From IMG/VR virus record IMGVR_UViG_3300031251_000001, positions 1 through 64,000 of that record: DNA of 64,000 bases; one strand, given 5' to 3'. The notes below the pieces were generated by a model, which saw only the letters and a program-made list of their open reading frames with translations, was not told where the DNA came from and did not search any database. Made by a program: the position numbers and the translations under genes. Below, piece by piece: positions 485 through 50,520 of the stretch (its first letter is position 1; every line of letters starts with the position of its first letter).

Positions 485-500
485 CAAAATACGTATTTTG
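485..500. promoter_or_regulatory. 16-bp palindrome CAAAATACGTATTTTG, copy 1 (putative operator)
   Basis: Exact palindrome, intergenic, 14 nt upstream of the ATG at 470. Confidence 0.75.
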
Positions 501-502
501 GG

Positions 503-667
503 TTAAGGGTTCAGAAGATCGATGATTGGTTTGGCCTTCGGCTTGGGTGGCGACGGCTTCGGTGGCGGCAACTGGGATGTCGGCTCGTCCTCGGTGGTGT
601 CGGCCGCGATCTTGACTGCCAGTTCCAGGTCCTCATCAGTCCTGGCTACACCATGATCGCTGCCCAT
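503..667 (-). CDS. small Pro-rich hypothetical protein (54 aa)
   Basis: Manual translation MGSDHGVARTDEDLELAVKIAADTTEDEPTSQLPPPKPSPPKPKAKPIIDLLNP*; fills the gap between flanking minus-strand genes. Confidence 0.45.
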   Translation of the reverse strand: MGSDHGVARTDEDLELAVKIAADTTEDEPTSQLPPPKPSPPKPKAKPIIDLLNP

Positions 668-1722
668 GCCAGTCTCCAGAACTCATTGAAGGTATGCTCC
701 TGCTTCACCCGCAGCTTATCAGCTGTCTCGACTCGATCCCAGAGCGTCTGAGGCTTCTCGGCACAGCGATACCAGCCATCGAGGAAACTGGAAGCATTGA
801 AGGAGGCACGTTCCACGCCGCAAGGCTCAGGAAGCATGGGCATATCGACCAGGTGGCCACTGATGCCGTGCTGTATGATCTCCTTGATGGGATCGATGTT
901 GATGGCCAGGAGCGGCATTCGCATGGACCGGCACATGGCAGGATAGAAACCGAAGCTGGTGCGGCAAGAAGGATAGACCGCGATGTCCCGATCGCGTAGC
1001 CAGACCACGAGATCCTGAATGAACATGGGTGCATGCGTCTGGAAACGACCAGCATGCTGGATCTGCATATCGCGCACGAGCGTACGACAGCGCTTGGGCA
1101 GTGAACAGGTGAGGTAGCAGTCGACGATGTGGTTGTCGGTGTTGTTGAGGAACTGATTGACCGTGTGGAACCACTGTTCGGGGAACTCACGCAGGCAACC
1201 TGAGTCACAGATGGCTGCGAATCGGAGTGGGGAGCTGATCGGGGCCGGGAAGGAGCTGTCTCCGGAGGCCCACGAGAGCTTGGTCGTGGTCACTTCACCG
1301 TTGACGGTGGATAAGAAGCTGGCACCCGAGGCCAGGCGGTGCACCGCAGCTGAGGGGCAGATGACACGGTGAACACAGCTCCACACTTCGGCCTCGGATC
1401 GCTGAATCTCGTAAGGCGAGATAACCATGTCAAGGAACGTGGTCTTGTTGGTGAGGTCGGTGCGAGGCAGGTAGAACCAATTGTGGTAGGGGACGTAGCC
1501 AAAGGCCACGATGTGCTTAAACTTGGCCGGTGCCAGCTTCTGCAGCTTGTGGGCACACTTACGCGAGATAGATTTGGTGTCCCAGTAGCGATGGATGCCC
1601 TGACCTTTGGTGCCGGAGACCAGGTAGTAGACATCAACGCCGCAAGCGAGAGCCAGATCGGCTACTCGCAAAGCTGCCAGGGTTGTTTCGGAGCGGTCGT
1701 AGGGGGCAAGAATAGCTAGCAT
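646..1722 (-). CDS. GT-B fold (GT4/Glycos_transf_1-like) glycosyltransferase, degenerate catalytic motif
   Basis: C-terminal DIAVYPSCRTSFGFYPAMCRSMRMPLLAINIDPIKEIIQHGISGHLVD parallels the GT4 D..v.PS..E.FG....EAma.g.Pvv......Eii..g..G.lv signature, but both Glu are replaced. Confidence 0.65.
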   Translation of the reverse strand: MLAILAPYDRSETTLAALRVADLALACGVDVYYLVSGTKGQGIHRYWDTKSISRKCAHKLQKLAPAKFKHIVAFGYVPYHNWFYLPRTDLTNKTTFLDMVISPYEIQRSEAEVWSCVHRVICPSAAVHRLASGASFLSTVNGEVTTTKLSWASGDSSFPAPISSPLRFAAICDSGCLREFPEQWFHTVNQFLNNTDNHIVDCYLTCSLPKRCRTLVRDMQIQHAGRFQTHAPMFIQDLVVWLRDRDIAVYPSCRTSFGFYPAMCRSMRMPLLAINIDPIKEIIQHGISGHLVDMPMLPEPCGVERASFNASSFLDGWYRCAEKPQTLWDRVETADKLRVKQEHTFNEFWRLAWAAIMV

Positions 1723-1755
1723 GCCTGCCCATCTTACCGTGCAACTCTTCGCTGT

Positions 1756-1977: not shown

Positions 1978-1988
1978 AGAGAGGTCTC

Positions 1989-12306: not shown

Positions 12307-13203
12307 TTATCTCCTGACGGCGGTCTTTCCCTTCGCAGCTGCTTTAGGGGCAACCTTGGCAGCCACCTGTTTGGGGGCCACCTTGGCGGGTTCACGAGGC
12401 GTGGACTTGGCGGGTTCCTTGTCGTCTGACTTGTAACCCTTCACGGCCTTGCCCAGCTTGACGCGGATATCGGTGAGCGACGCATAGTAGGCGTTAGCCG
12501 TACTCTGCAGCTCCTCGGCGGCGGTGATGGACTTGTCGAGCTCCTCAATCATGAACGGGTTGAGCTCATCCGGAGGGATATCGAGCAACCCGTTGTTGAT
12601 GGTGTCGTCCGCTGCTTCACCATACTTGTTGAGAGTATTGCAGAGCTTGTGGAACTTGCTCAGGGCCTGCATCGGCTTCTGAGGCACCCCTGGCTTCTTG
12701 CCGCCGCTGCGGTGGTGCTGAACACGCGAGTCGGAGTGTGAGGCTTCGCTGGCCAGCATGCTGTGCGACCAGCGCTGCTTGATGCAGGATGCCAGCATCT
12801 CCATCCGCTGGGTCTCACTGCCGATCTTGGAGAGCGACAGCCAATGGTTGTAGGTCAGCGCCATTGACCGCTTGGCCGCTTCCTCGGTCTTCTTGAGCAC
12901 GAACTCGCGAGTGAACGTATTGGCCAGCGTGCGGGCGTTGTAGAGCGTGGTGGTGGTCTGATCAAAGTAGATAGCCATCTGTTCGATAGGCTTGGCACCA
13001 TAGGACAGATCACCGCTCTCGATGCTCTGAAGCACCTCATTGACGTTGGTACCCAAATCGTAGTAGGTCAGCACACCGTTGTTGTTGAGCTTGACCATCC
13101 GCTCTTTGAGCTTGTCGCAGATGACCTGCAAGGGTTTGGTCATCTCTTTGTGCACACTGGCGGCGGTGCGCGGCACGGGCAGCCGTTCGACTTCCTGGGT
13201 CAT
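12307..13203 (-). CDS. DUF1016/YhcG N-terminal-like helical DNA-binding protein with Lys/Ala-rich tail
   Basis: YYDLG......YGAK.IEQ.A......L...R.LA..F ... LTYNHW..L......R..L...I...WS...L pattern resembles DUF1016_N; no nuclease domain follows. Confidence 0.55.
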   Translation of the reverse strand: MTQEVERLPVPRTAASVHKEMTKPLQVICDKLKERMVKLNNNGVLTYYDLGTNVNEVLQSIESGDLSYGAKPIEQMAIYFDQTTTTLYNARTLANTFTREFVLKKTEEAAKRSMALTYNHWLSLSKIGSETQRMEMLASCIKQRWSHSMLASEASHSDSRVQHHRSGGKKPGVPQKPMQALSKFHKLCNTLNKYGEAADDTINNGLLDIPPDELNPFMIEELDKSITAAEELQSTANAYYASLTDIRVKLGKAVKGYKSDDKEPAKSTPREPAKVAPKQVAAKVAPKAAAKGKTAVRR

Positions 13204-13205: not shown

Positions 13206-13811
13206 TTATACTTCCTCCTCATGTTGAGTGAACTGTGGTGTCCAGAACCGCTTGACACGTTCGATCAGTGTCACCAGCGGCTCGATAATGATCGATTCAC
13301 GAAGTGGGGAATCGGGACCAGGCACATACCGCAGTTGTAGCCCAGGAACATCTTCCTCCGTCGCGTAACCTGGATGGAGTGCGAGACCTCCCCGCACATT
13401 GATTCGTTTTACGATTAAGCAGGGCGAGCGGGCGTCATTCTCGTACATCCGTCTCGTCATGTCCATCGCTTTGACGTAAGCCTTCCCTAAAGGCGTGGTC
13501 TCGAATGCACTGAACATCCGAGGCAGGGTAGAGTTTTTATCGTCGTGCAGCTTGATGCCGCCGAGCGTGCTGCAGATCAGCAGAAACGGGAAACCATCAA
13601 CGCAGGCGTTAAAGGAATCCACCGACAGACCTGGCGTACCGTTGGTAGCCAGGTGATGAGCTCGCAGCTGCTTGATGTGGCGATCCACTCGAAACAGCTT
13701 CATCACGAGCGAGACAGTCTCCACCTCCAGGTTGATCTGGCTTTGACTGTCGCGCGACGTTCGATGGTTGACCTGCGAGATGAAGGCATCCCGCACGGGA
13801 TCATTCTTCAT
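13206..13811 (-). CDS. hypothetical protein
   Basis: 201-aa ORF coupled to the recA-like gene. Confidence 0.7.
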   Translation of the reverse strand: MKNDPVRDAFISQVNHRTSRDSQSQINLEVETVSLVMKLFRVDRHIKQLRAHHLATNGTPGLSVDSFNACVDGFPFLLICSTLGGIKLHDDKNSTLPRMFSAFETTPLGKAYVKAMDMTRRMYENDARSPCLIVKRINVRGGLALHPGYATEEDVPGLQLRYVPGPDSPLRESIIIEPLVTLIERVKRFWTPQFTQHEEEV

Positions 13812-15522
13812 CGTCTTCGGCCTCCTCCTTGGTCACCGGCTTACGTTCAGCCTCTTCCTTCTCATCCTTCTCCTTGGACTTCTTCTTGATCTTCTTAGCT
13901 TCCTCCTCCATGGCTTTCTTGGAGTGCTCGGCCACCAAGCGAGAAAGGATGTTGGGGTGCTTCTTCTCGTACTCCCGACGAATGGCGTCACGCTGTTCCA
14001 GGATGTCACCATCGAGGTAGGCGATCTCCTGAATACGCAGTGCCTTACGGATCATGGTCAGCACTTCAGGGTTGCGGTGGATCATGTCACCGAGCACACG
14101 GAACGGTACCGCGTCCTCTTTGGTCATCCCCAGCGTCTTAGAGTAAGCCGCGTTGGCGACATCACCCGTTTTCGTGATGGTCATGTGCCAGCCGGCATCG
14201 GTCAGGTTCTTCTTGTAGATGCCCTCCTGCACCGCCTTGGAAGCGAGCAGGGTCACCGTGGCGGCATTCCAGTCATAAGCCGTACGGAACTGCCAGCCCT
14301 GGGGGCTATCGTCAGGCTCGGTCCAGCGCAGGGAGTCTACCTGGATGACACGATGATCAGTACCGAACGAGTTCTTGTCGTTCTTGATCTTGATCGTGCT
14401 ACCCTCGTAGTTCGCAGCTCTGAACTTCTTCACCCGACGCAAGTCGAGATCGAATGATTCGACGAACTGCACCTGCTGACCGCCGGCCTTGCTCCTGGTC
14501 TCGAAGCCCTGCGAATCCTTGCCGAGCTTGGTCTGCGAGACCAGCACAACGAGGACGGGCCACTGTTCCAGGATGTTAGGCAGCGTCTTGAAGAAGTTGG
14601 TGTTCATCAAGGCTTCGTGGGGGTGGGCGCGATCGCCGTGGCCCCGCTCCCAGGTCTTCTCCTGATTCTCCTGAGACATCTTGCCGGAGATGGTATCCAC
14701 GGCCAGACCGAGCACCCGCGACCTGCCGATCTTCTCGATTTTCGTGACCTCACGAAAATTACCATTCTTCAGCTTGTGCTTGGTGGTGATCGGCACGCCG
14801 TTGAGCATGGTATGGATGGCAGCGTCGGTCTGCTTCTTGCAGATCTGTTGCCAGTGATCGACCGACCTGGCCCGATGGATCATGACCCGCTTGATGGAGT
14901 CACCCAGGAGACCCGGCGGCAGATTAGGCGACAACTTCGACTCGTGATCGATGTAGTTACCAAATCCACCATAGAGATCGATCCAGCGCATCAACTCCAA
15001 GGCCAAAGTCGATTTGGTGGAGCCCCAGACGCCAGCCAGGGTAATGACGGTGCCGATCGGCATGCCGGTGGCGCCGGCGATCCACTCCATCGGCAGACAG
15101 CCAGGGATGGGATCGCTGTCCCAGGCCGAGGATGCCCACATGGGGACGCCGATCCACAGGCCCCGTAGGGAGCCGGTGCCGATGAACTGCTGGGTATCGC
15201 CACTCTTCTTGAAGGAATGGGCGAGCTGTGCCTGGATGACGGCACTCTGTACGGTACGAGCGGCACGAGCCGAGGCGGGCAGGATCAGACCGCCGCCTCT
15301 TCTCTGCACGATGGGAGACCGACTAACCAACTCCTCCAGAGCGGGTGCGTCGGTAACGATGGGACTCTTATTGGCTGCTTTCTTTTTCGTGGTGGTGGGT
15401 TTAGCCTGGGCAGGCCTGGAGGGAGGGTTCTTCGTCGGGGGTGTGTAGTCAACGGCCACATCTGTTTCACGTGAAACACGTCCTGACTCGACCTGGATAG
15501 GTCCATTGCCGAAACGACCCAT
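13801..15522 (-). CDS. recA: RecA/UvsX-like recombinase
   Basis: G.P.G.V..LAG..GSTKSTLA (Walker A variant), YIDHE, AVDTISG (Walker B), SQ, AGG..VQF and K..KN motifs. Confidence 0.8.
   Translation of the reverse strand: MGRFGNGPIQVESGRVSRETDVAVDYTPPTKNPPSRPAQAKPTTTKKKAANKSPIVTDAPALEELVSRSPIVQRRGGGLILPASARAARTVQSAVIQAQLAHSFKKSGDTQQFIGTGSLRGLWIGVPMWASSAWDSDPIPGCLPMEWIAGATGMPIGTVITLAGVWGSTKSTLALELMRWIDLYGGFGNYIDHESKLSPNLPPGLLGDSIKRVMIHRARSVDHWQQICKKQTDAAIHTMLNGVPITTKHKLKNGNFREVTKIEKIGRSRVLGLAVDTISGKMSQENQEKTWERGHGDRAHPHEALMNTNFFKTLPNILEQWPVLVVLVSQTKLGKDSQGFETRSKAGGQQVQFVESFDLDLRRVKKFRAANYEGSTIKIKNDKNSFGTDHRVIQVDSLRWTEPDDSPQGWQFRTAYDWNAATVTLLASKAVQEGIYKKNLTDAGWHMTITKTGDVANAAYSKTLGMTKEDAVPFRVLGDMIHRNPEVLTMIRKALRIQEIAYLDGDILEQRDAIRREYEKKHPNILSRLVAEHSKKAMEEEAKKIKKKSKEKDEKEEAERKPVTKEEAEDDEE
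15463..15478. promoter_or_regulatory. parS: canonical bacterial parS site TGTTTCACGTGAAACA
   Basis: Exact match to the chromosomal parS consensus palindrome; read as VSRET in the recA-like frame. Confidence 0.7.
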
Positions 15523-15538: not shown

Positions 15539-15554
15539 CAAAATACGTATTTTG
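15539..15554. promoter_or_regulatory. 16-bp palindrome CAAAATACGTATTTTG, copy 2
   Basis: Exact; between a terminator and the SD of the recA-like gene (16 nt upstream of ATG). Confidence 0.75.
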
Positions 15555-17571: not shown

Positions 17572-20500
17572 CTAGGCAGCGGCATACCACAGTGGTATAC
17601 GGTGCTGTTCGCAATCCTTTTCAGTAAACGGTTCTGACCAGCGTGTCGACACTTCGTGTGACATGGATAGATAATAGGGTCCCGTTCCAAGCGACTCACC
17701 GTGAAGGTCAGTCGGGTAGATGGGCACTTGCTTGGCCATGGCCCAGCGGACCAGGCCTGTCTCCGGATGAGCCAGGTAATCGACCAGGTCGTACGGTGCT
17801 TCGATCAAGAGAGCATCGTGGATGGCCAGCAGCATTTTGACTTCCTTCTCGATCCCGGCCTCACGCAGAGCGTAATAGAGGTTGGCCACGCCCCGGTTGA
17901 GGGCACCAGCCACCAGAGCCTGGATCGGGAAGTTCATCGCCTGGCGTTCGATGTCGCCTGCCTGCCGCTTGTCCATCGCTCGTGGGAAGCGACGGCCGCG
18001 ACCAAAGCAGGAGAACATGACGCCCTCTTCGACAGCGATGCGGCGGCACTCGCTGAAGAACGGATCGAGTTCCGGGTACAGCTCGTACACGGTATCGATC
18101 ACCTGCTGTGCTTCCTCCTGGGTGATGTTGACGCCCTGCTCTTTGACAGCGAAGGCGATAGCCTTGGCACCGCGACCATAGAACAAACCGAACACCACGC
18201 TCTTGGCGATATGACGCAGGTTCTCCGCGTCGACCGACTTGAGCCCCGCCTTGCTGTAATCGCACTCCAGTTTGAAAGCGATGACCGCGATCATGGAGTG
18301 GATGTCCAAGTAGTCAGGATGCTTGGGGATACCCGGTGTGTCGCCATCGGGCAGGGTGTTACGACGCGCATGGTCGATGAGCACCTTACACCCCGACATG
18401 ATGCCGGCACCGAACAGCTCCGCACCCTTATAGTCGTGCTCGATGAAGCACATGCCGGGACGGGCCACGAACATCGATCGCAGCTTCTTGTTGTAGATCC
18501 AATTGCCCAGAGCATCCTGGCCGAAGATCTTCTTGAAGTCCTTGTCGCGATTCTTTGACTGATTCTGCAAGTTGGGTCGGAAGGACTTCCAACGGCTGGT
18601 TTCAGCAAAAGGAATGAAGTGGGACTTCACGACATCATCGGCGTCGATGCAGGCAGGCAGACCCTTGTCGTAGACGTGGCCACCCGTTTCGAGATCAATC
18701 TTGTAAGTGCCATCCTTGTTGAGCTCAGGGGGCCTCAGCGTCTGCTTGAGGGCCTGATCAAGAAATCGATGGTTGCGGATGAGATTGATCTTGGGGGCAA
18801 CGTCAGGGTTCTCTTCTGCCAGGATCGCCAACACCTGCTTGTTGGTCGAGGGACTGCGGAACAACGTCTCCCCTCGCTCGACGACATCCTCCCAGCGCAT
18901 CGGTGGCTTGGAAGTATCGATGAGCGGCTCCAGCTCCAGGGAGATAGCTCCCTCGGGCCGCAGCGACAAGGACTCACCCGTCTCCGGGTCGAACTTGCCG
19001 TTGTAACGTGTCCCAAAGAGGATCTCTTTGATCTGGTCGGTTGACCGCACATTGAGACCTTCTCGTTTCACTTTCTTCTTGGTGACCTTGAGTCCCTTCT
19101 TGAGCATCTTGCGTTTAGTCACCAGGTACCAGCGGTCGGGCCAGTTGAATGCCGCTTTGGCCTCCGCCTCCTTCTTGTCTCGTCCTCCCATGAACAAGGT
19201 AGTTAACTCTGCCAGTCTTTGTCGGTCGACTTTGATGCCGGTGGACTGCATCTCCAGGATCGGGGGCAGGGTCGACATGCCCTCCCAGAATGGCTCCCAG
19301 ACGCAATAGCCGTCATAGTCACAGCTGAGTCTCTTCTCCAGCTCCTCAGCGGCACGCAGGGTGACGTCGGCGTCATAACAGCCGTAGCTGTCACGCACGT
19401 GGATGCCGTCCTCCTCCAGCTCACCGATGAGGATCTCGTCAGGACACTCACCGTAACCATCCAGAGCGGCTGCGGTGATCTTCATCTTCGTGCAGTAGTC
19501 ATCCTTCCACTCTTCGAGCTTGCCCTCCCAGCGTGGTGCGGTGGTGTACCGCATCCCCAGGGACTCCAAGCCCAGGAAGGCTGTCTCTTCGATGGCGTGG
19601 GCGGCGACAGCGATATCGAATCCACCCTTGCCGGCCCGACACTGCTGCCACGGCTCACGGCCTTTCTCGTCGACCTTGTAGGGCACGGCGAACTCAGGAC
19701 GCAAGTCGAGACCGAAGTGGACGAACCACTCCAAATCATTCACGAAGAACGCACCGACCGCCCGCAAGCCACGCATGAAGTCTTTGAGTAGGCGGAACAA
19801 CCGTTTGACGGCCGGCCTACCGTACTTGTCGACGAAGGCGACGCCGCCACCCTGGTGGGTGAGCTTGAAACAGACAGCGGTCTTAAAGGCCCAGGACATC
19901 TGCACGGTCCGCAGGTAGGCACCTTTGTCGGTGGGGTGTTGTCCCTGCCACTCAGCATCCCATGCCACCATCCGTTTCTTCCGCCGCTTCATGGTGGCTT
20001 TAGCTTCTTTGACGATCTCGATCGCGTGCTCCAGGGTGGTGCACATACGGTGATCGATATCGTCTTCACGCTGGGTGCCGTCGCCGCTGGTGAGGAGGTA
20101 ACGGAACCGGCCCATGCCGCGCTCGAGTTGTCGCTTGCAGGCCACATCGGAGATAGCCTGCACGGGATGCAGAACCGTCATCACCGAAGCGGTGCGATCC
20201 TCGGCCTCATCGGGACAGCGATAGCTGATCTTCTCGATGCGACCCTCCATGTAGCCGACGCCGAACTTGCTGTCATTGAGTACCAGCTTGCTGGCGTCCG
20301 CCCCCAGGCACAGGATGTACTTGGGTTTGACAAGGAGGATCTCCATCCACAGGAGCGGCAGACAATCGGCTATCCACTTGGCCTTGGCCTTCTTGCTGCC
20401 GTCGGGTGGCACGAACTTGAGGATGTTGGTGACGTACCACTTGTTGGCCCCTTTGATGCGCAGGTCCCGAATGGTGTTGAGGAAGACCTCCCCCGTCTTA

Positions 20501-20883
20501 CCCATGAGGTTACGACGATAGGCTTGTTCCTCTTCCGCCGGCATCTTGCCGATGACCATGACCTCGGCTTCGTGAGGACCATCCACCGGCGGTACGACGT
20601 AGTCGCTGTCCAGCATCGACTTAGCCAGGTGCTCACTGTGCTGACCCCAGATGTGCCCAGGAATGAAAGAGGCCGGCAGATAGACGCCAGGCTTGGCTTC
20701 CACCATGAGCTCGGTACCGGGTACACGCAAGGCCTGGTCGTAGAGCCTGCTCATCTCCTCGGTGTAGAGCACCGGTTCTTTCTTTTTGGTTTTGGCGGTC
20801 TCCACTCCCATTGCCAGGTTGGCAGCGCGAATGAAGTCAGGCCCCGAGACGGGGATGCCAGGTGAGTTCCAGGGATAGATCAT
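17572..20883 (-). CDS. family A DNA polymerase with N-terminal uracil-DNA-glycosylase-like domain (SPO1-type architecture)
   Basis: UDG-4-like VMVIGKMP..EE, YVTNILKF.P, P..ILCLG, VLHP; exonuclease WDAEW and YGCYDAD; polymerase motifs A HDYKGAEL, B RHIAKSVVFGLFYG, C IHDALL. Confidence 0.9.
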   Translation of the reverse strand: MIYPWNSPGIPVSGPDFIRAANLAMGVETAKTKKKEPVLYTEEMSRLYDQALRVPGTELMVEAKPGVYLPASFIPGHIWGQHSEHLAKSMLDSDYVVPPVDGPHEAEVMVIGKMPAEEEQAYRRNLMGKTGEVFLNTIRDLRIKGANKWYVTNILKFVPPDGSKKAKAKWIADCLPLLWMEILLVKPKYILCLGADASKLVLNDSKFGVGYMEGRIEKISYRCPDEAEDRTASVMTVLHPVQAISDVACKRQLERGMGRFRYLLTSGDGTQREDDIDHRMCTTLEHAIEIVKEAKATMKRRKKRMVAWDAEWQGQHPTDKGAYLRTVQMSWAFKTAVCFKLTHQGGGVAFVDKYGRPAVKRLFRLLKDFMRGLRAVGAFFVNDLEWFVHFGLDLRPEFAVPYKVDEKGREPWQQCRAGKGGFDIAVAAHAIEETAFLGLESLGMRYTTAPRWEGKLEEWKDDYCTKMKITAAALDGYGECPDEILIGELEEDGIHVRDSYGCYDADVTLRAAEELEKRLSCDYDGYCVWEPFWEGMSTLPPILEMQSTGIKVDRQRLAELTTLFMGGRDKKEAEAKAAFNWPDRWYLVTKRKMLKKGLKVTKKKVKREGLNVRSTDQIKEILFGTRYNGKFDPETGESLSLRPEGAISLELEPLIDTSKPPMRWEDVVERGETLFRSPSTNKQVLAILAEENPDVAPKINLIRNHRFLDQALKQTLRPPELNKDGTYKIDLETGGHVYDKGLPACIDADDVVKSHFIPFAETSRWKSFRPNLQNQSKNRDKDFKKIFGQDALGNWIYNKKLRSMFVARPGMCFIEHDYKGAELFGAGIMSGCKVLIDHARRNTLPDGDTPGIPKHPDYLDIHSMIAVIAFKLECDYSKAGLKSVDAENLRHIAKSVVFGLFYGRGAKAIAFAVKEQGVNITQEEAQQVIDTVYELYPELDPFFSECRRIAVEEGVMFSCFGRGRRFPRAMDKRQAGDIERQAMNFPIQALVAGALNRGVANLYYALREAGIEKEVKMLLAIHDALLIEAPYDLVDYLAHPETGLVRWAMAKQVPIYPTDLHGESLGTGPYYLSMSHEVSTRWSEPFTEKDCEQHRIPLWYAAA

Positions 20884-31003: not shown

Positions 31004-32124
31004 GATCCCGTCTCAAGATAGCGGTTGAGGAATGGTTTAAGTTTCTCTTCGGTTCGCTCCTTGCGGGCGATCAGCTCCATGACGAGCATGCGGACCTCGG
31101 GGTCTTCCGTCTCCTCGTTCAGAGCCTGACGGATTGCCTCGGCGGCCTTACTCTTCCACTCGACTGAGGTGACAAACTCCCCTTCAGGGACGTCAGCATA
31201 GAAGTAGCGGAAGAAGAGGTGTGCCCGGTCTTGAGCGATCGCGCGAACACGATCCTCGAAGTCTTCGAGCGCTTTGTCATACTCCACGTCCACAATCGGC
31301 TTCTCGATATCCTTGTCATAGGTAAACCTCCGTTTGGGTGCGGTGTAGTTGCCTAAGTCGAGGTGTAGCTTCTTGAGGGCGTCGATAGCGTGCTGCTCGG
31401 TGACGCAGCGACGCAGGCGGATAACGTGGCGGGTACGCAGCTTGATCTTCGTGAACAGGTTCTTCTCGAAGAGCCAGACGTGTTTGACCTCCTCCTCAGC
31501 GATGTCCTGCATGCAGGTCGTGCCGGGGGAGAGGAACTTGAGGATGTCCTTACCCTTGCCGCCGCGATCGATCTTCTTGAGGAGGTGGCGGTGGATGTCA
31601 CCGGAGACCACCGTCTTGATGTTGGTGGGGACGTTAACCAGACTGTCATCCGGCTCAGGACCGAAGGGCTTGTGCTCGGCCCACATCTGGTGGCAGACCA
31701 GCAGGTTGGCTGCCGACGGAATAGACTCGAGCGCGCCACGCAGGAGCTCGGTATCGGTGTAATCGAGCCCATAGAGGGTAACCCCGCCGTCGCACTTGAT
31801 CAGCTGACGATGGAGGTGGGTGCCGCCGCAAAGCGTGGCCCAGGGCGGATCACTGACCTCATGCTGACCCTGGACGAAGTAAACGCACTCCTGGTCTCCA
31901 GTGATGCTGCGGCAACTGGCGATGAACCTGCGCAGCTCCTTGAAGGCTCGGCTGTTGATACGCTTGCGGTCGATGACGTCGCCGCACAGAACGATCTTCT
32001 TGACCTTCTTACGTTTGACGATGGCCAGGATCTGGGGCAACACCTGGTAGGCATCAAAGAACAAGGGACGAGAGGGCCAACACGCATCATCAAGGTGCAT
32101 GTCGCCGACGAATAAGATGGACAT
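30994..32124 (-). CDS. sbcD: SbcD/Mre11-like metallophosphoesterase nuclease
   Basis: GDMH, GDVID, GQHE, CHQ and GDIH motifs; adjacent to sbcC; start MSILFVGD after a GGAG SD. Confidence 0.85.
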   Translation of the reverse strand: MSILFVGDMHLDDACWPSRPLFFDAYQVLPQILAIVKRKKVKKIVLCGDVIDRKRINSRAFKELRRFIASCRSITGDQECVYFVQGQHEVSDPPWATLCGGTHLHRQLIKCDGGVTLYGLDYTDTELLRGALESIPSAANLLVCHQMWAEHKPFGPEPDDSLVNVPTNIKTVVSGDIHRHLLKKIDRGGKGKDILKFLSPGTTCMQDIAEEEVKHVWLFEKNLFTKIKLRTRHVIRLRRCVTEQHAIDALKKLHLDLGNYTAPKRRFTYDKDIEKPIVDVEYDKALEDFEDRVRAIAQDRAHLFFRYFYADVPEGEFVTSVEWKSKAAEAIRQALNEETEDPEVRMLVMELIARKERTEEKLKPFLNRYLETGSCT

Positions 32125-32137: not shown

Positions 32138-32153
32138 CAAAATACGTATTTTG
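32138..32153. promoter_or_regulatory. 16-bp palindrome CAAAATACGTATTTTG, copy 4
   Basis: Exact (extends to 22 bp, 32135..32156); intergenic, 13 nt upstream of the sbcD ATG. Confidence 0.75.
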
Positions 32154-33677: not shown

Positions 33678-34023
33678 GGCGTGTTGTCCTGAGAGTTGTC
33701 GATTAAAGATGAGAATGACCGCTTGTAGTGACCCACAAAAAATCCAAAATACGGATTTTGAAATGGCTCTTTTTGGGCCTCTCTCTCATGAGTCTTTTCC
33801 GTGTTTTCACGGGGAATAATTCGATTATCCTACTATCTCACTATTGGTTCCTTACCCCACCGCCTATGACAATTTTGAACCATCAGCCCACACCCCGCCG
33901 TTTAGAAAGATAGACCCTGTATTATTACTACATAATAATACGAACACCTTCGTGCGTCCCCTTGGAAAGGGGGACGCACTCCGGTGTGTAACGTAATACC
34001 AAGACTAGGAAAGAAGAGACGAC
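33678..34023. other. AT-rich intergenic region with inverted repeats (candidate replication origin / control region)
   Basis: Longest non-coding gap in the window; GTATTATTA-CTACA-TAATAATAC (33919..33941), GTGCGTCCCC...GGGGACGCAC (33952..33979) and a one-mismatch palindrome copy. Confidence 0.4.
33745..33760. promoter_or_regulatory. palindrome variant CAAAATACGGATTTTG (1 mismatch), copy 5
   Basis: 15/16 match, in the AT-rich gap upstream of 32625..33677. Confidence 0.6.
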
Positions 34024-34417: not shown

Positions 34418-34433
34418 CAAAATACGTATTTTG
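34418..34433. promoter_or_regulatory. 16-bp palindrome CAAAATACGTATTTTG, copy 6
   Basis: Exact; intergenic, 19 nt upstream of the alpha-CTD-like gene ATG. Confidence 0.75.
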
Positions 34434-38569: not shown

Positions 38570-40345
38570 TTATTCCTCTACCTCAGATCGCACAGGATCG
38601 CGAGCCTCAGAGTCACCACCCAGACCCTCGCAGATGGTGGAGATCGTGGCAGGCGGGGGCAGGGGTGCGATCCACTGGCCTAAATTGTCCCTCTTCTTGA
38701 TCGGCGTAGGGTCGAATACAGGCATGTCGGATTCTGCCATTGTGGCAGGCCGATGGAAGAGGGTAGCGATCTCGAACAGCTCAGCCTTCAGCTTGCTGGA
38801 ATACTCGATGTTGATCTGGTACAGAGCGGCCAGGTTTCGGAGCCACAACCAACACTCTCCCTCGACCTCCTTGGCCGGCCCCTCGAAGGGGTAGGTCACG
38901 TCGCCGTGCACCAGGTGACCACGGTACCAAGCCTGGCCGCCACGGGTGAATAAAGCCGTGAAGCGAAGGTCAGCGTTGAGCACCGACCAGACGTCATTGG
39001 TCTGCTGCACGAACCATCCGGTGCGAGTCCGCAAAATACGTATTTTGCGATTGGCCAGGTAGACCGCCTGGGTGTTGTTTTGTTTCTCCTGCCGATCAAG
39101 GCAGCGACTCCACTTACCCTGCGACGGACTCTTGAGCTGCGAGGTGATGAGTTGCGGGTCGAAGTGGTTCAGACGCATGTGTCGGATCATCGCCGTGATC
39201 TCATCCGGAGCAGCGTTGGTGATCCACTTGTTCATCGCCGTCTGCCAGGTGCGCGTGCGGTGCGACAACCACTCAATGAGTTCCAGCGGCTCACGCTGCC
39301 GGACATAGGTCGAGAGGGTTTCGTAGTCTGTGCCGGAGTAACCCTTGGCACAGATGTGACCATCGGTCATCGCCGCCATGCAGACCATGTACCAGGTGAG
39401 CTTCGGTCCCCAGAACACGATCTTCTTGCCGCTGAGACTCTGCCAGGCTAAGGTAGTGCGTGCCTGATCATCCCAGTGCCAGCCCACCATAGGCACGAGT
39501 GCTTCGGAGTAGCGATGTTGAATCTTGCTGATGCGCGGAGCGATGAGGGGCTCATAGACAGCATAAACCGTACCCTCGCCGGACTTGATGCACTCCTCCA
39601 ACCCTGTCAAACCCCCTTCGGGGCGATCTTTGTCGCAGGGAACGTAATCCCGTACAACCCGGTCCTTATGCTTCGTGACCAGGTGAATGCCCGCCAGTTT
39701 GGTGAGCGACGACCAACTGGGGACCACTACGTAATACTTCGACTTGGGAATACGTAGCGGACGGTGGAGCAGCGGATAGAGCACAGCGGCAGAGACATAG
39801 CCATAGCGTTCACAGTGCTCATCCGCCGGCTTGTTGTAGTTCAAGTGGTGAATGATGCTGATCACTTCCTTGGGCATCTGCTCGGAGCGAAGGATCTTCT
39901 CGGCGCCGTGCCAGATCTCTTCCACGGTGTTGGGCTTGCTCTTGCCGATCGGTGAACCAGAGGGGAAGTGGGAGGCGAGTCGTTGCCTGGCTTCGTCACG
40001 GGAGCACTTCCAGCTGGCGGACGCCAGATCCACGACACTGCCGCTGAAATCACAGGATCGACATTCGACGGTGACGACGGACGTGGTACACTCACAGATA
40101 AGCAGGTCGAGCGTCTTGCAACGCGGGCACCAGATGGTTGCCGGCAAACAGGCGTCAGGCAATTCAAGCCCAATGGCTTTGGCGATGACAGACCAAGCCG
40201 ATCCCGACTTATAACTTTGGAGCGATCCCATGACGTTAGTTGACATTGCTAGTGACGTGTCCTTGTCCATGACGAAGCAGGTGCGAGATAAGTACGGCCT
40301 GCCTGGGTTCGTTAAAGGTGCAACTGATGATGATCTGCGGCACAC
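38570..40345 (-). CDS. hypothetical protein with N-terminal primase-type zinc finger
   Basis: CPRC...CRSCDFSGSVVDL resembles a CHC2-like zinc-binding domain; no intact TOPRIM motif; true start probably near 40270 or 40246. Confidence 0.6.
   Translation of the reverse strand: MCRRSSSVAPLTNPGRPYLSRTCFVMDKDTSLAMSTNVMGSLQSYKSGSAWSVIAKAIGLELPDACLPATIWCPRCKTLDLLICECTTSVVTVECRSCDFSGSVVDLASASWKCSRDEARQRLASHFPSGSPIGKSKPNTVEEIWHGAEKILRSEQMPKEVISIIHHLNYNKPADEHCERYGYVSAAVLYPLLHRPLRIPKSKYYVVVPSWSSLTKLAGIHLVTKHKDRVVRDYVPCDKDRPEGGLTGLEECIKSGEGTVYAVYEPLIAPRISKIQHRYSEALVPMVGWHWDDQARTTLAWQSLSGKKIVFWGPKLTWYMVCMAAMTDGHICAKGYSGTDYETLSTYVRQREPLELIEWLSHRTRTWQTAMNKWITNAAPDEITAMIRHMRLNHFDPQLITSQLKSPSQGKWSRCLDRQEKQNNTQAVYLANRKIRILRTRTGWFVQQTNDVWSVLNADLRFTALFTRGGQAWYRGHLVHGDVTYPFEGPAKEVEGECWLWLRNLAALYQINIEYSSKLKAELFEIATLFHRPATMAESDMPVFDPTPIKKRDNLGQWIAPLPPPATISTICEGLGGDSEARDPVRSEVEE
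39032..39047. promoter_or_regulatory. 16-bp palindrome CAAAATACGTATTTTG, copy 7 (intragenic)
   Basis: Exact (extends to 20 bp); encodes KIRIL within 38570..40345. Confidence 0.7.
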
Positions 40346-44107: not shown

Positions 44108-44122
44108 GGTTTGCTCCTGGGT

Positions 44123-44156
44123 AAAAAGAAAACACCAGGCTGGGGAGCCTGGTGTT
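44123..44156 (-). terminator. intrinsic terminator
   Basis: Minus strand AACACCAGGCT-CCCC-AGCCTGGTGTT followed by TTCTTTTT, after the acidic ORF. Confidence 0.8.
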
Positions 44157-44178
44157 GTTGTAGTCCGCGTGACGCTAG

Positions 44179-47290: not shown

Positions 47291-47323
47291 TCCAGAGGGT
47301 AAGAGATCAGTGCGAGCTATACA

Positions 47324-47719: not shown

Positions 47720-47726
47720 GCCTGCC

Positions 47727-48128: not shown

Positions 48129-48137
48129 AGTAATCCC

Positions 48138-48416
48138 TTACTCTGGTTCCAGGTCCGGAATATCGGCCGGCATTCCTTTGCCGGTGCCATCGCGGGAGAT
48201 GACTCCCTTAATTTGTATTCTACCTCCTGATGGATGAATCATCATAGTCTTGGGATCAAACTTGATGGCCTCCTTCGTCCTGGCGTCGACGATCTTGATC
48301 GTGCAGTTCACTGTCTGCACGTTAGGCCCGAGAGGGCTCTCGGCATTATCGAGGTTGGTTTGCGCGATCGCAGTGAACTGGCGTAGTACGGGCTTCTCAG
48401 ACGTATTCAATGACAT
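48138..48416 (-). CDS. hypothetical protein
   Basis: 92-aa ORF overlapping the glycosyltransferase stop. Confidence 0.55.
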   Translation of the reverse strand: MSLNTSEKPVLRQFTAIAQTNLDNAESPLGPNVQTVNCTIKIVDARTKEAIKFDPKTMMIHPSGGRIQIKGVISRDGTGKGMPADIPDLEPE

Positions 48417-50520
48417 CGGTCACGGTTCCCTTCTTAGCTAGAGCGACGATAGCCTTCTGGACAAAGGCATCATAGGGGTGCTTCCAGTGTGGGTTAAGGT
48501 GATAGGTTCCAGTGGGCAGCGCAGCGGTGCCGGCCTCTACGTACTTGGCGTTCAAGTCGGCTGACGAGGAGGCGTGGTAGGCGCTAACGCCCCAGCGGTA
48601 AATGTATTGCCAGGCAGACGGCTCCAGGGCGGGTCGCAACACCGGGAGACCCAGACGGGCGACCTTCTCCATGAAGATCTTATCGTAGTCCCCCGTGGTT
48701 GGCTCAATGAGCCGGTGCTCGACTGCCACACTCCGCTTGAAGACCGATGTCATCAGGCCGTATCCGAAGTTCTTGGGATCAACAATCCCCTCGTAGGTTG
48801 TCTCGCCCTTCACACCGACTGGCCAGAACCAGTAGCGCTGTGAGTTGTACATGAAGCAGGTGGGGTCTTTCTGAAGGGCACTCATGGCCTGGTCCAGTCG
48901 ACCGGGGAGGCTGATATCATCGTCGTCCCAGACAGCCACGTATTCCTCAGCCATCGACATGCCGATGGCGAACTTCTCTCCCAGGGAGAGGCAGCGTTTG
49001 GGCAGGTTAATGATCTGGACGTTATGGGCTCCGCATTTCAGCTCCGAGCCGCGAGCATCGTTGATGATGATCAGTTCCTTGTGTGGCCACGATTGCAGCA
49101 GGAACGACTGAATCGACTCTTCCAGGAGTCGCTGATACTTGGTGCCGGCCCGCCCGAAGGTCATGCAGATGGCGGTGACCTTGGGTGGGATCTGGGGAGC
49201 AGCGGAGAGGGCCACGGGGTGAGCGGAGAGCTTGGCCAAGGGTTTCTTCTCCGGAGGTTTAGGAGGAGGTGGGGGCAGAGTCTGCGTCTCGGTATAGGTG
49301 GTGGTCGAGGTTTGAGTGTCACACTCGGTGCTGGTCTCAGCAGAGGCCGTGGCTACTATGGCCGCTGGTATGTGCTGCACCATGTGATCGATTGCTTCTT
49401 TGCTGATTGATGCAAGGAACTGAGCATCATTTTCTACATCTACCGATTTCCTGAAGTTGAGATCTGCGCTCTCGCGAAGATCAGGGATTCCAAAATACGT
49501 ATTTTGCGGCGGGTGAATCACCGGCAGGATGCTGTTGTGCTGATCGTAGCCGTCGACGTTGGCGAAGTTGATGAACTTCTTGTCCTGGCGAACGATGATC
49601 TCTTTCTTCTGCACCGCCGAGTACATGACCAGATCGTTGCCTTCGTCGGGCTTGGGCAGGTCGGGGTAGACCTTGCGAGCAGCAGCAAGCGCCTCTTCAA
49701 TGTCGTCCTCGCTTTGCCCTTTATGGTCACGGAAATGGATGAGCACGTCATCCCATCGAAGGCCGAGCTCCACGCGGCCAATGATGTAGTTAGCCATCAT
49801 CCGCCAGGCCGGTGACTCAAAACCTTTACCGCGAATATGGGTGAAGCGGTGTTGCCATTTCAGACCCTTGATGCAGACACAGCGACCGCCACGCTGTCGT
49901 ACTTTGGCGTGGGTGTAGACTTCTTCACCGCCGAAGTTCCGGAAGTTGTCGTTGAAACCGACCCAGTCTTTGGTACGCATGCCGAACAGGCCCATGCCGT
50001 GGGCCGGAATCTCCAGCCACTTATCCTCCTGGAAGGTCGTGTGCCAGGTCCCCAGCATGACGTCAGTGCCCCACTGCGGCTCCATGTGGGTAGCCAGCAC
50101 CTGTTCGGTGTCGTCGTAGCAGAGCGGGCCGTGCAGCAGATCCTTGTTATCCGGGAAGGTCTCGATGTACTCGTGGATCGCCTCGCAGGCCCCAGGGTGC
50201 AGGATGACGTGGGAGTCCACGCACAGGGTGTAGTCTGAGGCTGATTCCTGAAAGACCAGGTTACGGGGCCTGGCTGTGCCATCTTGCTTGGAATGGATGT
50301 AGCGGACGTTCATGCCGGGCGTGTCCCGCATCATCTTGTTGCAGAGTTCAAAGTTGAGTTGGGCTTCGGCGGGTCGCTTGGTGTTGTCGATCACCAGGAG
50401 CTGGTCCACCCACTTCTTCTGGAATAATCGTGTCGTAGTGAGCGTAGCCCAGAGGCCGTCGTAATCTGTGTGGACAGCCATGCCCACCGTGAGCGTATTC
50501 TTCCGCATTGTCGACTCCAT
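48397..50520 (-). CDS. two-domain GT-A glycosyltransferase: polypeptide GalNAc-transferase-like domain plus GT2 domain
   Basis: Domain 1: ARPRN, CVDSHV (DxH), P.HGMGLFGM, GF...F..FGGEE.....KV...GG...C......WQH.F. Domain 2: KVTAIC.T, Q.....ELIIIND, WDDDD.S.P.RL. Thr/Pro-rich linker between them. Confidence 0.85.
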   Translation of the reverse strand: MESTMRKNTLTVGMAVHTDYDGLWATLTTTRLFQKKWVDQLLVIDNTKRPAEAQLNFELCNKMMRDTPGMNVRYIHSKQDGTARPRNLVFQESASDYTLCVDSHVILHPGACEAIHEYIETFPDNKDLLHGPLCYDDTEQVLATHMEPQWGTDVMLGTWHTTFQEDKWLEIPAHGMGLFGMRTKDWVGFNDNFRNFGGEEVYTHAKVRQRGGRCVCIKGLKWQHRFTHIRGKGFESPAWRMMANYIIGRVELGLRWDDVLIHFRDHKGQSEDDIEEALAAARKVYPDLPKPDEGNDLVMYSAVQKKEIIVRQDKKFINFANVDGYDQHNSILPVIHPPQNTYFGIPDLRESADLNFRKSVDVENDAQFLASISKEAIDHMVQHIPAAIVATASAETSTECDTQTSTTTYTETQTLPPPPPKPPEKKPLAKLSAHPVALSAAPQIPPKVTAICMTFGRAGTKYQRLLEESIQSFLLQSWPHKELIIINDARGSELKCGAHNVQIINLPKRCLSLGEKFAIGMSMAEEYVAVWDDDDISLPGRLDQAMSALQKDPTCFMYNSQRYWFWPVGVKGETTYEGIVDPKNFGYGLMTSVFKRSVAVEHRLIEPTTGDYDKIFMEKVARLGLPVLRPALEPSAWQYIYRWGVSAYHASSSADLNAKYVEAGTAALPTGTYHLNPHWKHPYDAFVQKAIVALAKKGTVTDVIEYV
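49491..49506. promoter_or_regulatory. 16-bp palindrome CAAAATACGTATTTTG, copy 8 (intragenic)
   Basis: Exact; encodes QNTYF in the glycosyltransferase interdomain linker. Confidence 0.7.

What the first reader, a model, noticed from the sequence alone, without database searches (positions are those of the whole stretch)
485..49506. Dispersed 16-bp palindrome CAAAATACGTATTTTG (8 copies) marking a putative replication/recombination regulon
Seen: exact copies at 485, 15539, 20898, 32138, 34418, 39032 and 49491, plus a one-mismatch copy at 33745, all very AT-rich in a GC-rich genome. Five lie 13-19 nt upstream of a start codon, next to the SD: the ORF starting at 470, recA-like, DNA polymerase, sbcD and the alpha-CTD-like gene. 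Three are maintained inside coding sequence in two different frames (KIRIL, QNTYF), so selection appears to act on the nucleotide sequence. It matches no LexA, NrdR or parS consensus I know. Inference: it binds a dimeric phage protein, acting as an SOS-like operator set or a parS/NBS-like genome-organising site. Alternatively it is an RNA hairpin translational operator, given its fixed position by the SD.
Basis: partly seen in the sequence, partly recalled or inferred. Interest (0 to 1): 0.85.

Follow-up and report, generated by a model that had tools for sequence, protein, structure and literature searches.

The report
Genome-wide palindromic sites in jumbo phage
A 16-base palindrome repeated 23 times around a 214-kb uncultivated phage genome, almost always in the short gaps between genes, is most likely the docking site of a phage-encoded ParB/KorB-like DNA-binding protein that controls or organises blocks of genes; related phages carry their own versions of the same system.

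Summary
CAAAATACGTATTTTG occurs 7 times exactly and once with one mismatch in the window, against 0.02 expected. The window is the first 64 kb of a circular 214-kb phage contig, which holds 22 exact copies and 1 variant. There are no copies with 2-3 mismatches and no lone half-sites. Nineteen of the 23 lie between genes, typically as stop codon, motif, Shine-Dalgarno, ATG.

A second phage, with proteins 35-60% identical, keeps the same 16-mer at orthologous junctions. More distant relatives carry different perfect palindromes in 11 to over 31 identical copies. These again sit ahead of the DNA polymerase and recA-like genes, so site and reader co-evolve.

Dyad symmetry is conserved but hairpin stability is not (0 to -8 kcal/mol). 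No -35/-10 pattern accompanies the motif, and copies also sit between convergent genes and inside genes.

It is conserved across the clade and lies in an operon headed by a palindrome.

Best reading: a KorB/Noc-like dispersed site set for a dimeric phage protein. Binding is not shown. It is not an SOS box, a parS site, a standard promoter or a terminator.

The parts
485..500 (.). Palindrome copy, exact. It lies 2 nt after the upstream stop codon and 14 nt before the ATG of the ORF 470..3.
15539..15554 (.). Palindrome copy, exact. It directly follows a GC hairpin with a T-run, and lies 16 nt before the ATG of the recA/UvsX-like gene. It heads the operon recA-like, 201-aa gene, ParB-HTH-like gene.
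20898..20913 (.). Palindrome copy, exact. It lies 14 nt before the ATG of the DNA polymerase, inside the last 11 codons of the primase-like gene (frame KIRIL).
32138..32153 (.). Palindrome copy, exact. It lies 13 nt before the ATG of sbcD, the first gene of sbcDC.
33745..33760 (.). One-mismatch copy (CAAAATCCGTATTTTG on the gene strand). It lies in a 346-nt non-coding gap, 67 nt before the next start.
34418..34433 (.). Palindrome copy, exact. It lies 2 nt after a stop codon and 19 nt before the ATG of the 124-aa alpha-CTD-like gene.
39032..39047 (.). Palindrome copy, exact, in mid-gene: residue 400 of a 558-aa ORF, frame KIRIL.
49491..49506 (.). Palindrome copy, exact, in mid-gene: residue 335 of a 703-aa glycosyltransferase-family-2 protein, frame QNTYF.
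12307..13203 (-). Candidate reader of the palindrome. It is a 298-aa helical protein (Pfam DUF1016_N) with a ParB/Noc/KorB-type HTH fold, long helices and a basic tail. It has no CTPase domain.
   Evidence: Binding is inferred, not shown.
13801..15522 (-). recA/UvsX-like recombinase, the first gene behind the copy at 15539. The orthologous gene in distant relatives is also headed by their own palindrome.
17572..20883 (-). DNA polymerase (UDG-like, exonuclease and family-A polymerase domains in one protein), behind the copy at 20898. Relatives have their own palindrome ahead of this gene.
30994..32124 (-). sbcD-like phosphoesterase behind the copy at 32138.

Best explanation
The 16-bp palindrome, weakly extended to tcCAAAATACGTATTTTGga, is a double-stranded DNA recognition site for a symmetric phage-encoded DNA-binding protein. 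The best candidate is the clade-wide ParB/Noc/KorB-type helix-turn-helix protein encoded at 12307-13203. About 23 identical sites are spread round the 214-kb genome at gene boundaries. The protein bound there most likely acts as a global switch or barrier on transcription of the adjoining gene blocks. Those blocks include the conserved recA-like, polymerase and sbcDC units and the protein's own operon. RK2 KorB at its OB sites and mycobacteriophage repressors at stoperators work in this manner. Shown here: the existence of the sites, their invariance and placement, their conservation and concerted change among relatives, the lack of promoter, terminator or hairpin features, and the fold and conservation of the candidate protein. 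Inferred: that this protein binds this site, and that binding regulates transcription.
For: (1) There are 22 exact copies and 1 variant in 168 kb held, none with 2-3 mismatches and no lone half-sites. Nineteen of 23 lie in the roughly 5% of the genome that is non-coding. (2) The flank preferences are symmetric (TC upstream, GA downstream) but do not pair within copies: 9 of 23 are complementary against 9.9 expected. This fits two independent half-site contacts rather than a stem. (3) Every lineage variant is a perfect palindrome, yet RNA hairpin energy ranges from 0 to -8 kcal/mol and is -0.6 here. Symmetry is what is kept, not folding. (4) A phage with proteins 35-60% identical keeps 16/16, 16/16 and 15/16 bases at three orthologous junctions, while the flanks are 30-45% identical. 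(5) Distant relatives carry other palindromes: TTGACTCCGGAGTCAA at least 27 times, TTGATTCCGGAATCAA at least 31 times, TTGAATCCGGATTCAA at least 11 times, plus AAAATCCGGATTTT and GTGGAGACGTCTCCAC. Eight orthologous genes are preceded by the respective variant in two of these genomes, so the change was concerted, as with a co-evolving reader. (6) The protein from 12307-13203 gives an AF2 model with pLDDT 82.6. Foldseek ranks 1-31 in the PDB are all ParB/Noc/Spo0J/SopB DNA-binding domains with probability about 1. TM-score is 0.66 on the Noc domain bound to its site, and KorB-operator complexes also appear. All of these proteins bind 13-16-bp palindromes as dimers. (7) A profile of this protein finds a homologue in 65 related loci, including every lineage that has its own palindrome. 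(8) Its gene lies in an operon headed by a palindrome in the focal phage and in two distant relatives, and 75 nt behind a site in a third. That is the layout of an autoregulated regulator.
Against: No binding has been shown. The Foldseek E-values are weak (0.07-1), and sequence searches against the PDB find no ParB. The protein lacks the ParB CTPase domain, so a KorB-type sliding clamp is excluded. No promoter could be recognised at the sites, so there is nothing obvious for an operator to control. All 16 positions being invariant is tighter than usual for operator sets. Even spacing in the focal genome (P=0.003) and mid-gene copies falling in the longest gaps fit an organising role better than a regulatory one. 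A canonical parS at 15463-15478 is a rival target for a ParB-like protein. However, it is absent from all relatives that have the protein.
Confidence: 0.45

Rival explanations
1. Same kind of protein-DNA site, but its role is to organise the genome rather than regulate it. Noc/NBS- or parS-like anchoring, compaction, partition or replication-related spacing would be examples. The intergenic placement would then only reflect what coding sequence tolerates.
For: The spacing of the 23 sites round the circle is more even than chance: CV 0.57 against 0.94 +/- 0.17, P=0.003. The three mid-gene copies lie in the longest gaps between intergenic copies. Copies occur between convergent genes. The candidate reader has the Noc/ParB DNA-binding fold.
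Against: Relatives show no regular spacing (CV 0.71-0.98). Their sites cluster in regions of small genes and occur as tandem pairs 56 nt apart. Sites have stayed ahead of the same genes (polymerase, recA-like) across very deep divergence, which an organiser has no need for. The candidate lacks the CTPase and spreading domain of ParB/Noc.
Confidence: 0.15
2. The palindrome is the core of a phage-specific promoter read by a phage-modified or phage-encoded RNA polymerase. Transcription would start just after the motif, giving 10-20-nt leaders. A hairpin promoter of the phage N4 type is one version.
For: It is an AT-rich island in a 58% G+C genome, immediately ahead of SD-ATG at 14 or more genes. 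It directly follows terminator-like hairpins at 15539 and at contig 84133. The downstream flank favours G then A. Concerted change of all copies is also what T7-group promoters show (own knowledge). If the loop centre were at -11, the start would fall 3-4 nt after the motif, which fits the geometry.
Against: Perfect dyad symmetry in every lineage is not expected of a promoter. No RNA polymerase was found among about 130 proteins scanned. The phage's own sigma factor has a different, clearly bipartite promoter, CTAAA-N15-CGTCATAA. Sites occur at 4 of 13 convergent junctions but at only 1 of about 11 divergent ones, and also in mid-gene. One copy is followed at once by a terminator-like hairpin (contig 165219). 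Terminators followed directly by SD-ATG are common without the motif, so the argument 'terminator then motif means promoter' is weak. The DNA hairpin is worth only -2 kcal/mol.
Confidence: 0.13
3. The element works in RNA, as a hairpin bound by a phage protein. Possible roles are a translational operator next to the SD (T4 RegA or gp43-like), a boxB/nut-like antitermination site, or a processing site in long polycistronic transcripts.
For: The position is next to the SD at most copies. Nearly all genes are co-directional, and many terminators must be read through. In one relative the GGAG inside the palindrome serves as the SD for five genes and would be sequestered in the stem. Lambdoid N/boxB pairs also co-evolve (own knowledge).
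Against: The hairpin is worth only -0.6 kcal/mol here and 0 in the AAAATCCGGATTTT lineage. No stem covariation exists among 23-31 copies, although RNA-binding proteins usually tolerate it. The flanks do not covary. The distance to the start ranges from 9 to 134 nt and differs between orthologous sites: 17 vs 11 nt to the start, and 17 vs 6 nt to the CTAAA box. The convergent-junction and mid-gene copies have no start to control.
Confidence: 0.12
4. The site belongs to a host transcription factor that the phage exploits, as with NtcA or PhoB sites in cyanophages. Lineage differences would then reflect different hosts.
For: The palindromes differ between lineages with different G+C content. The TTGA-N8-TCAA variants look loosely like CRP/FNR-family boxes (own knowledge).
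Against: A scan of 185,579 species genomes gave only scattered single hits, median G+C 43%, with no genome holding several copies and no related prophage. Complete invariance is unusual for host regulons. A conserved phage-encoded candidate reader exists.
Confidence: 0.05
5. A selfish or REP-like small palindromic repeat that spreads into intergenic gaps and has no function for the phage.
For: The copies are identical, the location is intergenic, and the sequences are lineage-specific.
Against: Positions are conserved between phages with 35-83% protein identity while the flanks have diverged. That indicates old, selected sites, not recent spread. No transposase or RAYT-like gene was seen. At 16 bp it is shorter than known mobile repeats.
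Confidence: 0.03

Closest known systems
KorB and its OB operators on IncP plasmid RK2 (PMC11790492; the count of 12 sites is from my own knowledge)
   Same: Near-identical short palindromes (OB core TTTAGCGGCTAAA) are dispersed over a replicon, at and away from promoters. They are read by a ParB-family HTH dimer that acts as a global regulator, including of its own operon.
   Different: KorB is a CTP-dependent sliding clamp with a ParB N-terminal domain and a partner, KorA. The phage candidate has only the HTH-type domain plus long helices. The site sequences are unrelated. Here the replicon is a 214-kb phage with 23 sites.
Noc and its NBS sites in Bacillus (PDB 6y93 and 7ol9 appear; the figure of about 70 sites is from my own knowledge)
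   Same: Palindromes of 14-16 bp with AT-rich arms and a CG-type centre are scattered over a genome. The best structural match of the candidate protein is the Noc DNA-binding domain. The relatives' centres (TCCGGA) resemble the NBS centre (CCCGGG).
   Different: Noc tethers DNA to the membrane and spreads using CTP. There is no evidence for either activity here, and the sequence differs.
17-bp dyad repeats of Cluster O mycobacteriophages (PMC4351075)
   Same: There are 34 copies with invariant arms throughout a phage genome. Most are intergenic or near gene 5' ends, and about a third are in genes. They have no orientation, the function is unknown, and the phages are not obviously temperate.
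   Different: The phages and sequence are unrelated (TGTTCGG-N3-CCGAACA, G+C-rich, with a variable centre). No reader has been proposed there. Here a candidate reader and clade-wide co-variation are found.
Stoperators of Cluster A mycobacteriophages (PMC9283540, PMC6550527)
   Same: Twenty to thirty copies of one short site lie in short intergenic gaps across the genome. A phage repressor bound there blocks transcription elongation. Site and repressor co-evolve between subclusters.
   Different: Stoperators are asymmetric 13-mers oriented with transcription and bound by a monomer, in temperate phages. Here the site is a perfect palindrome, and the lifestyle is unknown.
Canonical parS / chromosomal ParB
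   Same: A 16-bp palindrome with a central ACGT, read by a ParB-type HTH.
   Different: Only the four central bases agree. A true parS (TGTTTCACGTGAAACA) is present separately, once, at 15463-15478.
T7-group promoters and their RNA polymerases (own knowledge)
   Different: Those promoters are asymmetric and 23 bp long. No such polymerase was found here.

Membership tests
LexA / SOS box | Sequence matches a LexA consensus of some bacterial clade | tested here: not met
   Compared from my own knowledge with the known consensus sequences (CTGT-N8-ACAG, GAAC-N4-GTTC, GTTC-N7-GTTC, TTAG-N6-TACTA and others). None matches. This rests on recall, not on a database.
LexA / SOS box | A LexA-type (S24 peptidase) repressor is encoded, or host SOS genes carry the site | tested here: inconclusive
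   No such domain was found among about 130 proteins scanned. About 46 kb of the genome was not held, and the host is unknown.
parS / ParB partition site | Match to TGTTNCACGTGAAACA | tested here: not met
   Only 4 of 16 positions agree (the central ACGT). A perfect parS exists separately at 15463-15478.
parS / ParB partition site | ParB with an N-terminal CTPase domain, and ParA | tested here: not met
   The candidate has only the HTH-type helical domain and no beta strands. No ParBc or ParA Pfam hit was found in the proteins scanned.
KorB/Noc-like dispersed palindromic sites | Many near-identical palindromes dispersed over the replicon | tested here: met
   23 sites over 214 kb, of which 22 are identical.
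KorB/Noc-like dispersed palindromic sites | Reader with a ParB-family DNA-binding domain | tested here: inconclusive
   The Foldseek top 31 PDB hits are all ParB/Noc/Spo0J/SopB domains with probability about 1, but E is 0.07-1. There is no sequence-level hit.
   This needs EMSA, DAP-seq or ChIP.
Sigma-70-type promoter | -35 and -10 hexamers 16-18 bp apart | tested here: not met
   Nothing is conserved 8-30 nt upstream of the motif. Consensus-like promoters are not enriched: 5 vs 5.9 and 4 vs 7.4.
Promoter of the phage's own FliA-like sigma factor | CTAAA-N15-CGTCATAA | tested here: not met
   That motif occurs at four other places. The palindrome does not contain it.
Intrinsic terminator | Stable G+C-rich stem followed by a U-run | tested here: not met
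   The stem is A-U only and worth -0.6 kcal/mol. The real terminator-like hairpins are separate, neighbouring features.
Stoperator (Cluster A mycobacteriophage) | Asymmetric site oriented with transcription | tested here: not met
   The site is a perfect palindrome with symmetric flanks.
Stoperator (Cluster A mycobacteriophage) | Many copies in short intergenic gaps of co-directional genes | tested here: met
N4-type hairpin promoter | Extrudable 5-7-bp stem with a 3-nt loop, and a virion RNA polymerase | tested here: inconclusive
   The palindrome has an even length. The DNA hairpin is worth -2 kcal/mol. No polymerase was recognised in the large proteins tested.
RNA translational operator | Fixed geometry relative to the SD/AUG, and stem covariation | tested here: not met
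   The distance ranges from 9 to 134 nt and differs between orthologous sites. There is no covariation.

The most novel reading that the evidence does not exclude
A large clade of uncultivated 135-235-kb phages shares an undescribed genome-wide control system. A ParB-type HTH protein without a CTPase domain reads 16-26-bp palindromes that change in concert with it. These sites would act as orientation-independent barriers or insulators, dividing an almost unidirectionally transcribed genome into units of about 5-10 kb. The replication and recombination genes, and the regulator itself, would sit at unit heads.
Probability: 0.2. Interest if true: 0.8.

Novelty: new variant of a known kind. Interest (0 to 1): 0.6.

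Why it matters
Gene regulation and genome organisation in large uncultivated phages are almost unknown. Most of this phage's proteins match no family. This finding gives a concrete and testable cis element with a candidate trans factor, conserved across dozens of metagenomic phage genomes. Natural specificity variants exist: ACGT versus CCGG centres, and C/T/A at one half-site position. It may also shed light on the unexplained invariant dyad repeats of Cluster O mycobacteriophages. It would extend the ParB/Noc/KorB way of reading dispersed palindromes to lytic-looking jumbo phages. The site-protein pairs could serve as orthogonal parts for synthetic regulation.

Tried and rejected
- No nucleotide relative and no close protein relative exists among deposited phages.
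- The literal sequence is absent from the literature library in any relevant context.
- Rfam gave no hit in the window or in two loci, and the window has no tRNA.
- All 12 Pfam/PHROG calls, covering about 130 proteins, found no HTH, ParBc, S24 or RNA-polymerase domain. They did find a sigma factor, a primase, ThyX, methyltransferases and others.
- AF2 of the 124-aa alpha-CTD-like protein without an alignment failed (pLDDT 44), so it was not fold-searched.
- The second candidate binder, 27400-27957, had no hit anywhere.
- The 24-bp palindrome of relative L043 proved to be single-copy. Not every relative has a recognised multi-copy site in the 23 kb held.
- The idea that the mid-gene copy in the glycosyltransferase marks an old gene boundary was rejected. 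The homologous gene of a relative aligns from residue 443, not 335.
- 'Terminator then motif means promoter' was weakened, because terminators directly followed by SD-ATG are common without the motif.
- A formal test of co-variation between the recognition helix and the site was not attempted. With about 9 lineages it would be confounded by phylogeny.

Full report
**Observation**

The pattern search finds the 16-mer CAAAATACGTATTTTG exactly at 485, 15539, 20898, 32138, 34418, 39032 and 49491, and with one mismatch at 33745. Dinucleotide-preserving shuffles give 0.02 expected, and none reaches 8. The window is about 58% G+C, and the motif is 75% A+T.

A scan of IMG/VR shows that the window is the first 64 kb of IMGVR_UViG_3300031251_000001, a 214,229-bp contig. 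Its last 127 nt repeat its first 127 nt, which indicates a circular assembly. The contig holds 22 exact copies.

I could read 168 kb of the contig. In that stretch there are 22 exact copies, one copy with one mismatch, none with two or three mismatches, and one chance-level match with four. The 8-mers that make up the motif occur essentially only inside full copies, so there are no lone half-sites.

**Placement**

A simple codon-usage gene call gives 93-96% coding sequence. In the window, 65 of 69 genes are on the minus strand.

- Nineteen of the 23 sites lie between genes.
- One lies in the last 11 codons of a primase-like gene, and so also 14 nt before the polymerase start.
- Three are in mid-gene.

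The usual layout in gene direction has four parts: the stop codon of the upstream gene, 2-6 nt, the motif, then 9-25 nt holding a GGAG-type Shine-Dalgarno and the start codon. In longer gaps the motif is not tied to either side. The distances to the next start are 14, 56, 67 and 134 nt. One copy (contig 210557) fills the 24-nt gap between two convergent stop codons.

The flanks add a weak symmetric extension, TC before the motif and GA after it. An A-rich bias at -4/-3 comes from the stop codons. Nothing is conserved where a -35 element would lie. The -1/+1 flank bases are complementary in 9 of 23 copies, against 9.9 expected if they were independent. I counted this by hand. The palindrome is therefore not being extended as a stem.

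**What the downstream genes are**

In the window the genes behind the motif are:

- a recA/UvsX-like recombinase;
- a polymerase with UDG-like, exonuclease and family-A polymerase domains in one protein;
- sbcD, with sbcC after it;
- a 124-aa protein with a weak RNA-polymerase alpha-CTD likeness;
- a 156-aa unknown protein.

Elsewhere on the contig they include thyX, a 1466-aa unknown protein next to the tail and baseplate genes, a probable secreted protein, and several small unknowns. The set is therefore wider than replication and recombination, although those genes are prominent.

**Not a standard promoter, terminator or stable hairpin**

- Sigma-70-like promoters are no more frequent than in shuffles.
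- The phage encodes its own FliA/WhiG-like sigma factor at 26732-27358. A matching bipartite promoter, CTAAA-N15-CGTCATAA, occurs in four other intergenic gaps with leaders of 45-90 nt. The palindrome is not that promoter.
- As RNA the 16-mer folds with only -0.6 kcal/mol. As DNA the value is -2 kcal/mol.
- G+C-rich hairpins with T-runs are common between genes. Many are followed directly by SD-ATG without the palindrome. They must therefore be read through. Finding a palindrome right after such a hairpin (15539, contig 84133) does not prove a promoter.
- At contig 165219 the order is reversed: palindrome first, then hairpin.

**Relatives with the same site**

One scan of metagenome contigs found fragments of a second phage (Ga0075160_10005874, Ga0075160_10099583, Ga0075158_10003344, Ga0209174_10091789 and others). 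Its proteins are 35-60% identical to the focal phage.

At three orthologous junctions it has 16/16, 16/16 and 15/16 of the motif bases, while the 40-nt flanks are only 30-45% identical. Further copies in those fragments show the same stop, motif, SD, ATG layout.

At one junction both phages have a terminator, then the palindrome, then a CTAAA-N15 promoter. The gap between the palindrome and the CTAAA box is 17 nt in one and 6 nt in the other.

**Relatives with different sites**

The polymerase has a large family of full-length relatives, the nearest at about 50% identity. An alignment-based scan brought in 80 loci from phage contigs, many of 135-235 kb.

Several of these carry their own repeated perfect palindromes. 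A second scan counted the copies:

| Palindrome | Copies found | Contig size |
|---|---|---|
| TTGACTCCGGAGTCAA | at least 27, identical | 135.5 kb |
| TTGATTCCGGAATCAA | at least 30, plus 1 variant | 144 kb |
| TTGAATCCGGATTCAA | at least 11 | 74 kb |

AAAATCCGGATTTT, GTGGAGACGTCTCCAC and CGACAAAAWCGWTTTTGTCG recur in other lineages.

These sites are again almost all intergenic between co-directional genes. They lie 2-200 nt before the next start. They occupy 3 of 8 convergent junctions and 1 of 6 divergent junctions in those genomes.

Between the first two genomes, eight orthologous genes with 47-83% identity are each preceded by the respective variant. Among them are the polymerase, the recA-like gene and a ligase. 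The recA-like genes of the focal phage and of that lineage are homologous at 22% identity. Each has its own palindrome 16-17 nt before the start.

The arrangement is therefore old, and the site sequence has changed in concert. RNA hairpin energies of the variants range from 0 to -8 kcal/mol. The shared property is dyad symmetry, not stability.

**A candidate reader**

Pfam gives only DUF1016_N. I built an 18-sequence alignment from the related loci. With it, AlphaFold2 gives a confident, all-helical model with pLDDT 82.6 and a disordered basic tail.

Foldseek against the PDB ranks ParB, Noc, Spo0J and SopB DNA-binding domains in places 1-31, and KorB-operator complexes a little lower. Probabilities are near 1, and TM-score reaches 0.66 on the Noc domain bound to its site. 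The E-values, however, are only 0.07-1. The viral library adds 'ParB-like protein' and 'Chromosome partitioning protein'. A profile search of PDB sequences finds nothing. The ParB N-terminal CTPase fold is absent.

A profile of the alignment finds a homologue in 65 related loci, including every lineage with its own palindrome.

The gene order is also suggestive:

- In the focal phage it is palindrome, recA-like, 201-aa gene, this gene, with overlaps or 2-nt gaps.
- In two distant relatives it is palindrome, recA-like, this gene.
- In another relative a site lies 75 nt before this gene.

That is the look of a regulator in an operon controlled from its own site.

A perfect canonical parS at 15463-15478 could be an alternative target. 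However, it occurs in no relative. The conserved protein therefore pairs better with the conserved dispersed palindromes.

**Interpretation**

The data fit a double-stranded DNA site read by a symmetric protein best. A ParB/Noc/KorB-type HTH protein is the leading candidate.

The closest working analogues are:

- KorB at its dispersed OB palindromes on RK2 (PMC11790492);
- Noc at its NBS sites;
- among phages, the stoperators of Cluster A mycobacteriophages (PMC9283540) and the unexplained invariant 17-bp dyad repeats of Cluster O (PMC4351075).

What the bound protein does is inferred. I favour control of transcription at block boundaries, as repression or barrier. Three things support this. 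Sites have stayed ahead of the same genes over deep divergence. They cluster among small genes in relatives. And the candidate's own operon is headed by one.

A purely organising role remains a serious rival. In the focal genome the sites are more evenly spaced than chance (CV 0.57, P=0.003), and the mid-gene copies fall in the longest gaps. This regularity is not seen in relatives.

Promoter and RNA-level readings are weaker, for the reasons given above. A host-factor site is not supported by the truncated genome scan.

**Limits**

- Binding is not shown.
- About 46 kb of the contig was not read.
- Most proteins match no family.

Noticed in passing
window 15463-15478: A perfect canonical parS palindrome, TGTTTCACGTGAAACA, occurs once. 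It lies inside the 5' end of the recA-like gene, about 60 nt from the motif copy at 15539, and is absent from all 238 loci held when that check was run. It may recruit host ParB/SMC, or hint at plasmid-like maintenance.
   Followed up: partly
window 26732-27358 (-); promoters at window 6528-6502 and 47361-47335, L006 4567-4541, L026 3762-3736: The phage encodes a FliA/WhiG-like sigma factor (Sigma70 regions 2 and 4). A matching promoter class, CTAAA-N15-(G)CGTCATAA, occurs in four intergenic gaps. The second phage has CTAAA-N15-CGGCATAA at the orthologous place.
   Followed up: partly
window 5144-5099; L001 3985-3940; L009 2615-2570; L020 2519-2474; L039 10831-10786, 5846-5801, 4876-4831 (all on the gene strand): Seven copies of a roughly 60-90-nt structured-RNA-like element lie in long intergenic gaps. 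It has two hairpins, an invariant CCUGGUGG loop and a CACAAC tail. Ten of 20 predicted pairs show compensatory changes among the 7 copies. There is no Rfam match. It could be a put-like antiterminator RNA, an sRNA or a ribozyme. The loop resembles the E. coli Chi sequence (7 of 8 bases).
   Followed up: partly
e.g. window 44108-44178; L029 276-348 and 2274-2319; L039 1458-1531; L026 6326-6388: Many G+C-rich hairpins with T-runs are followed at once by SD-ATG, leaving no room for a promoter. Terminator read-through or antitermination must be routine in this phage.
   Followed up: no
window 34024-34398 (-): A free-standing 124-aa protein has only weak matches, and all of them are to the C-terminal domain of the RNA polymerase alpha subunit (Pfam E 0.003; four PDB hits at E 0.4-0.9). 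A single-sequence AF2 model was unusable (pLDDT 44).
   Followed up: partly
whole contig (site coordinates listed in note 5): The 23 sites are spaced more evenly round the 214.1-kb circle than chance (CV 0.57 against 0.94, P=0.003). The three mid-gene copies fall in the longest gaps. Three relatives do not show this.
   Followed up: partly
L133:4720, L145:2194, L152:609, L186:323, L204:1471, L220:5828 (contig IMGVR_UViG_3300020153_000001): In this relative several genes, including a 750-aa LigD-type ligase, start 2-4 nt after the palindrome core. The GGAG inside TTGACTCCGGAGTCAA would then be their Shine-Dalgarno, paired with CUCC in the other arm.
   Followed up: no
window 17572-20883 (-) and proteins P0003, P0007, P0010, P0018 and others: The polymerase fuses a UDG-like domain, an exonuclease and a family-A polymerase. 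Many relatives are 300-500 residues longer and match in 3-4 separate stretches, which suggests inteins or other insertions.
   Followed up: no
window 33678-34023: A 346-nt non-coding gap, richer in A+T, holds a strong terminator-like hairpin, an AT palindrome (tattattatgtagtaataata) and the one-mismatch copy. There was no Rfam or tRNA hit.
   Followed up: no
L029 1210-1386 (contig about 178.6 kb): A tRNA-like sequence with a CAU anticodon stem-loop (tRNA-Met type) was seen by eye in an intergenic gap. It was not run through ARAGORN.
   Followed up: no
L171:5567/5623, L173:235/290, L191:992/1053 (contig IMGVR_UViG_3300031950_000001): Palindrome copies occur as tandem pairs 55-61 nt apart. One pair brackets a terminator-like hairpin.
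   Followed up: no
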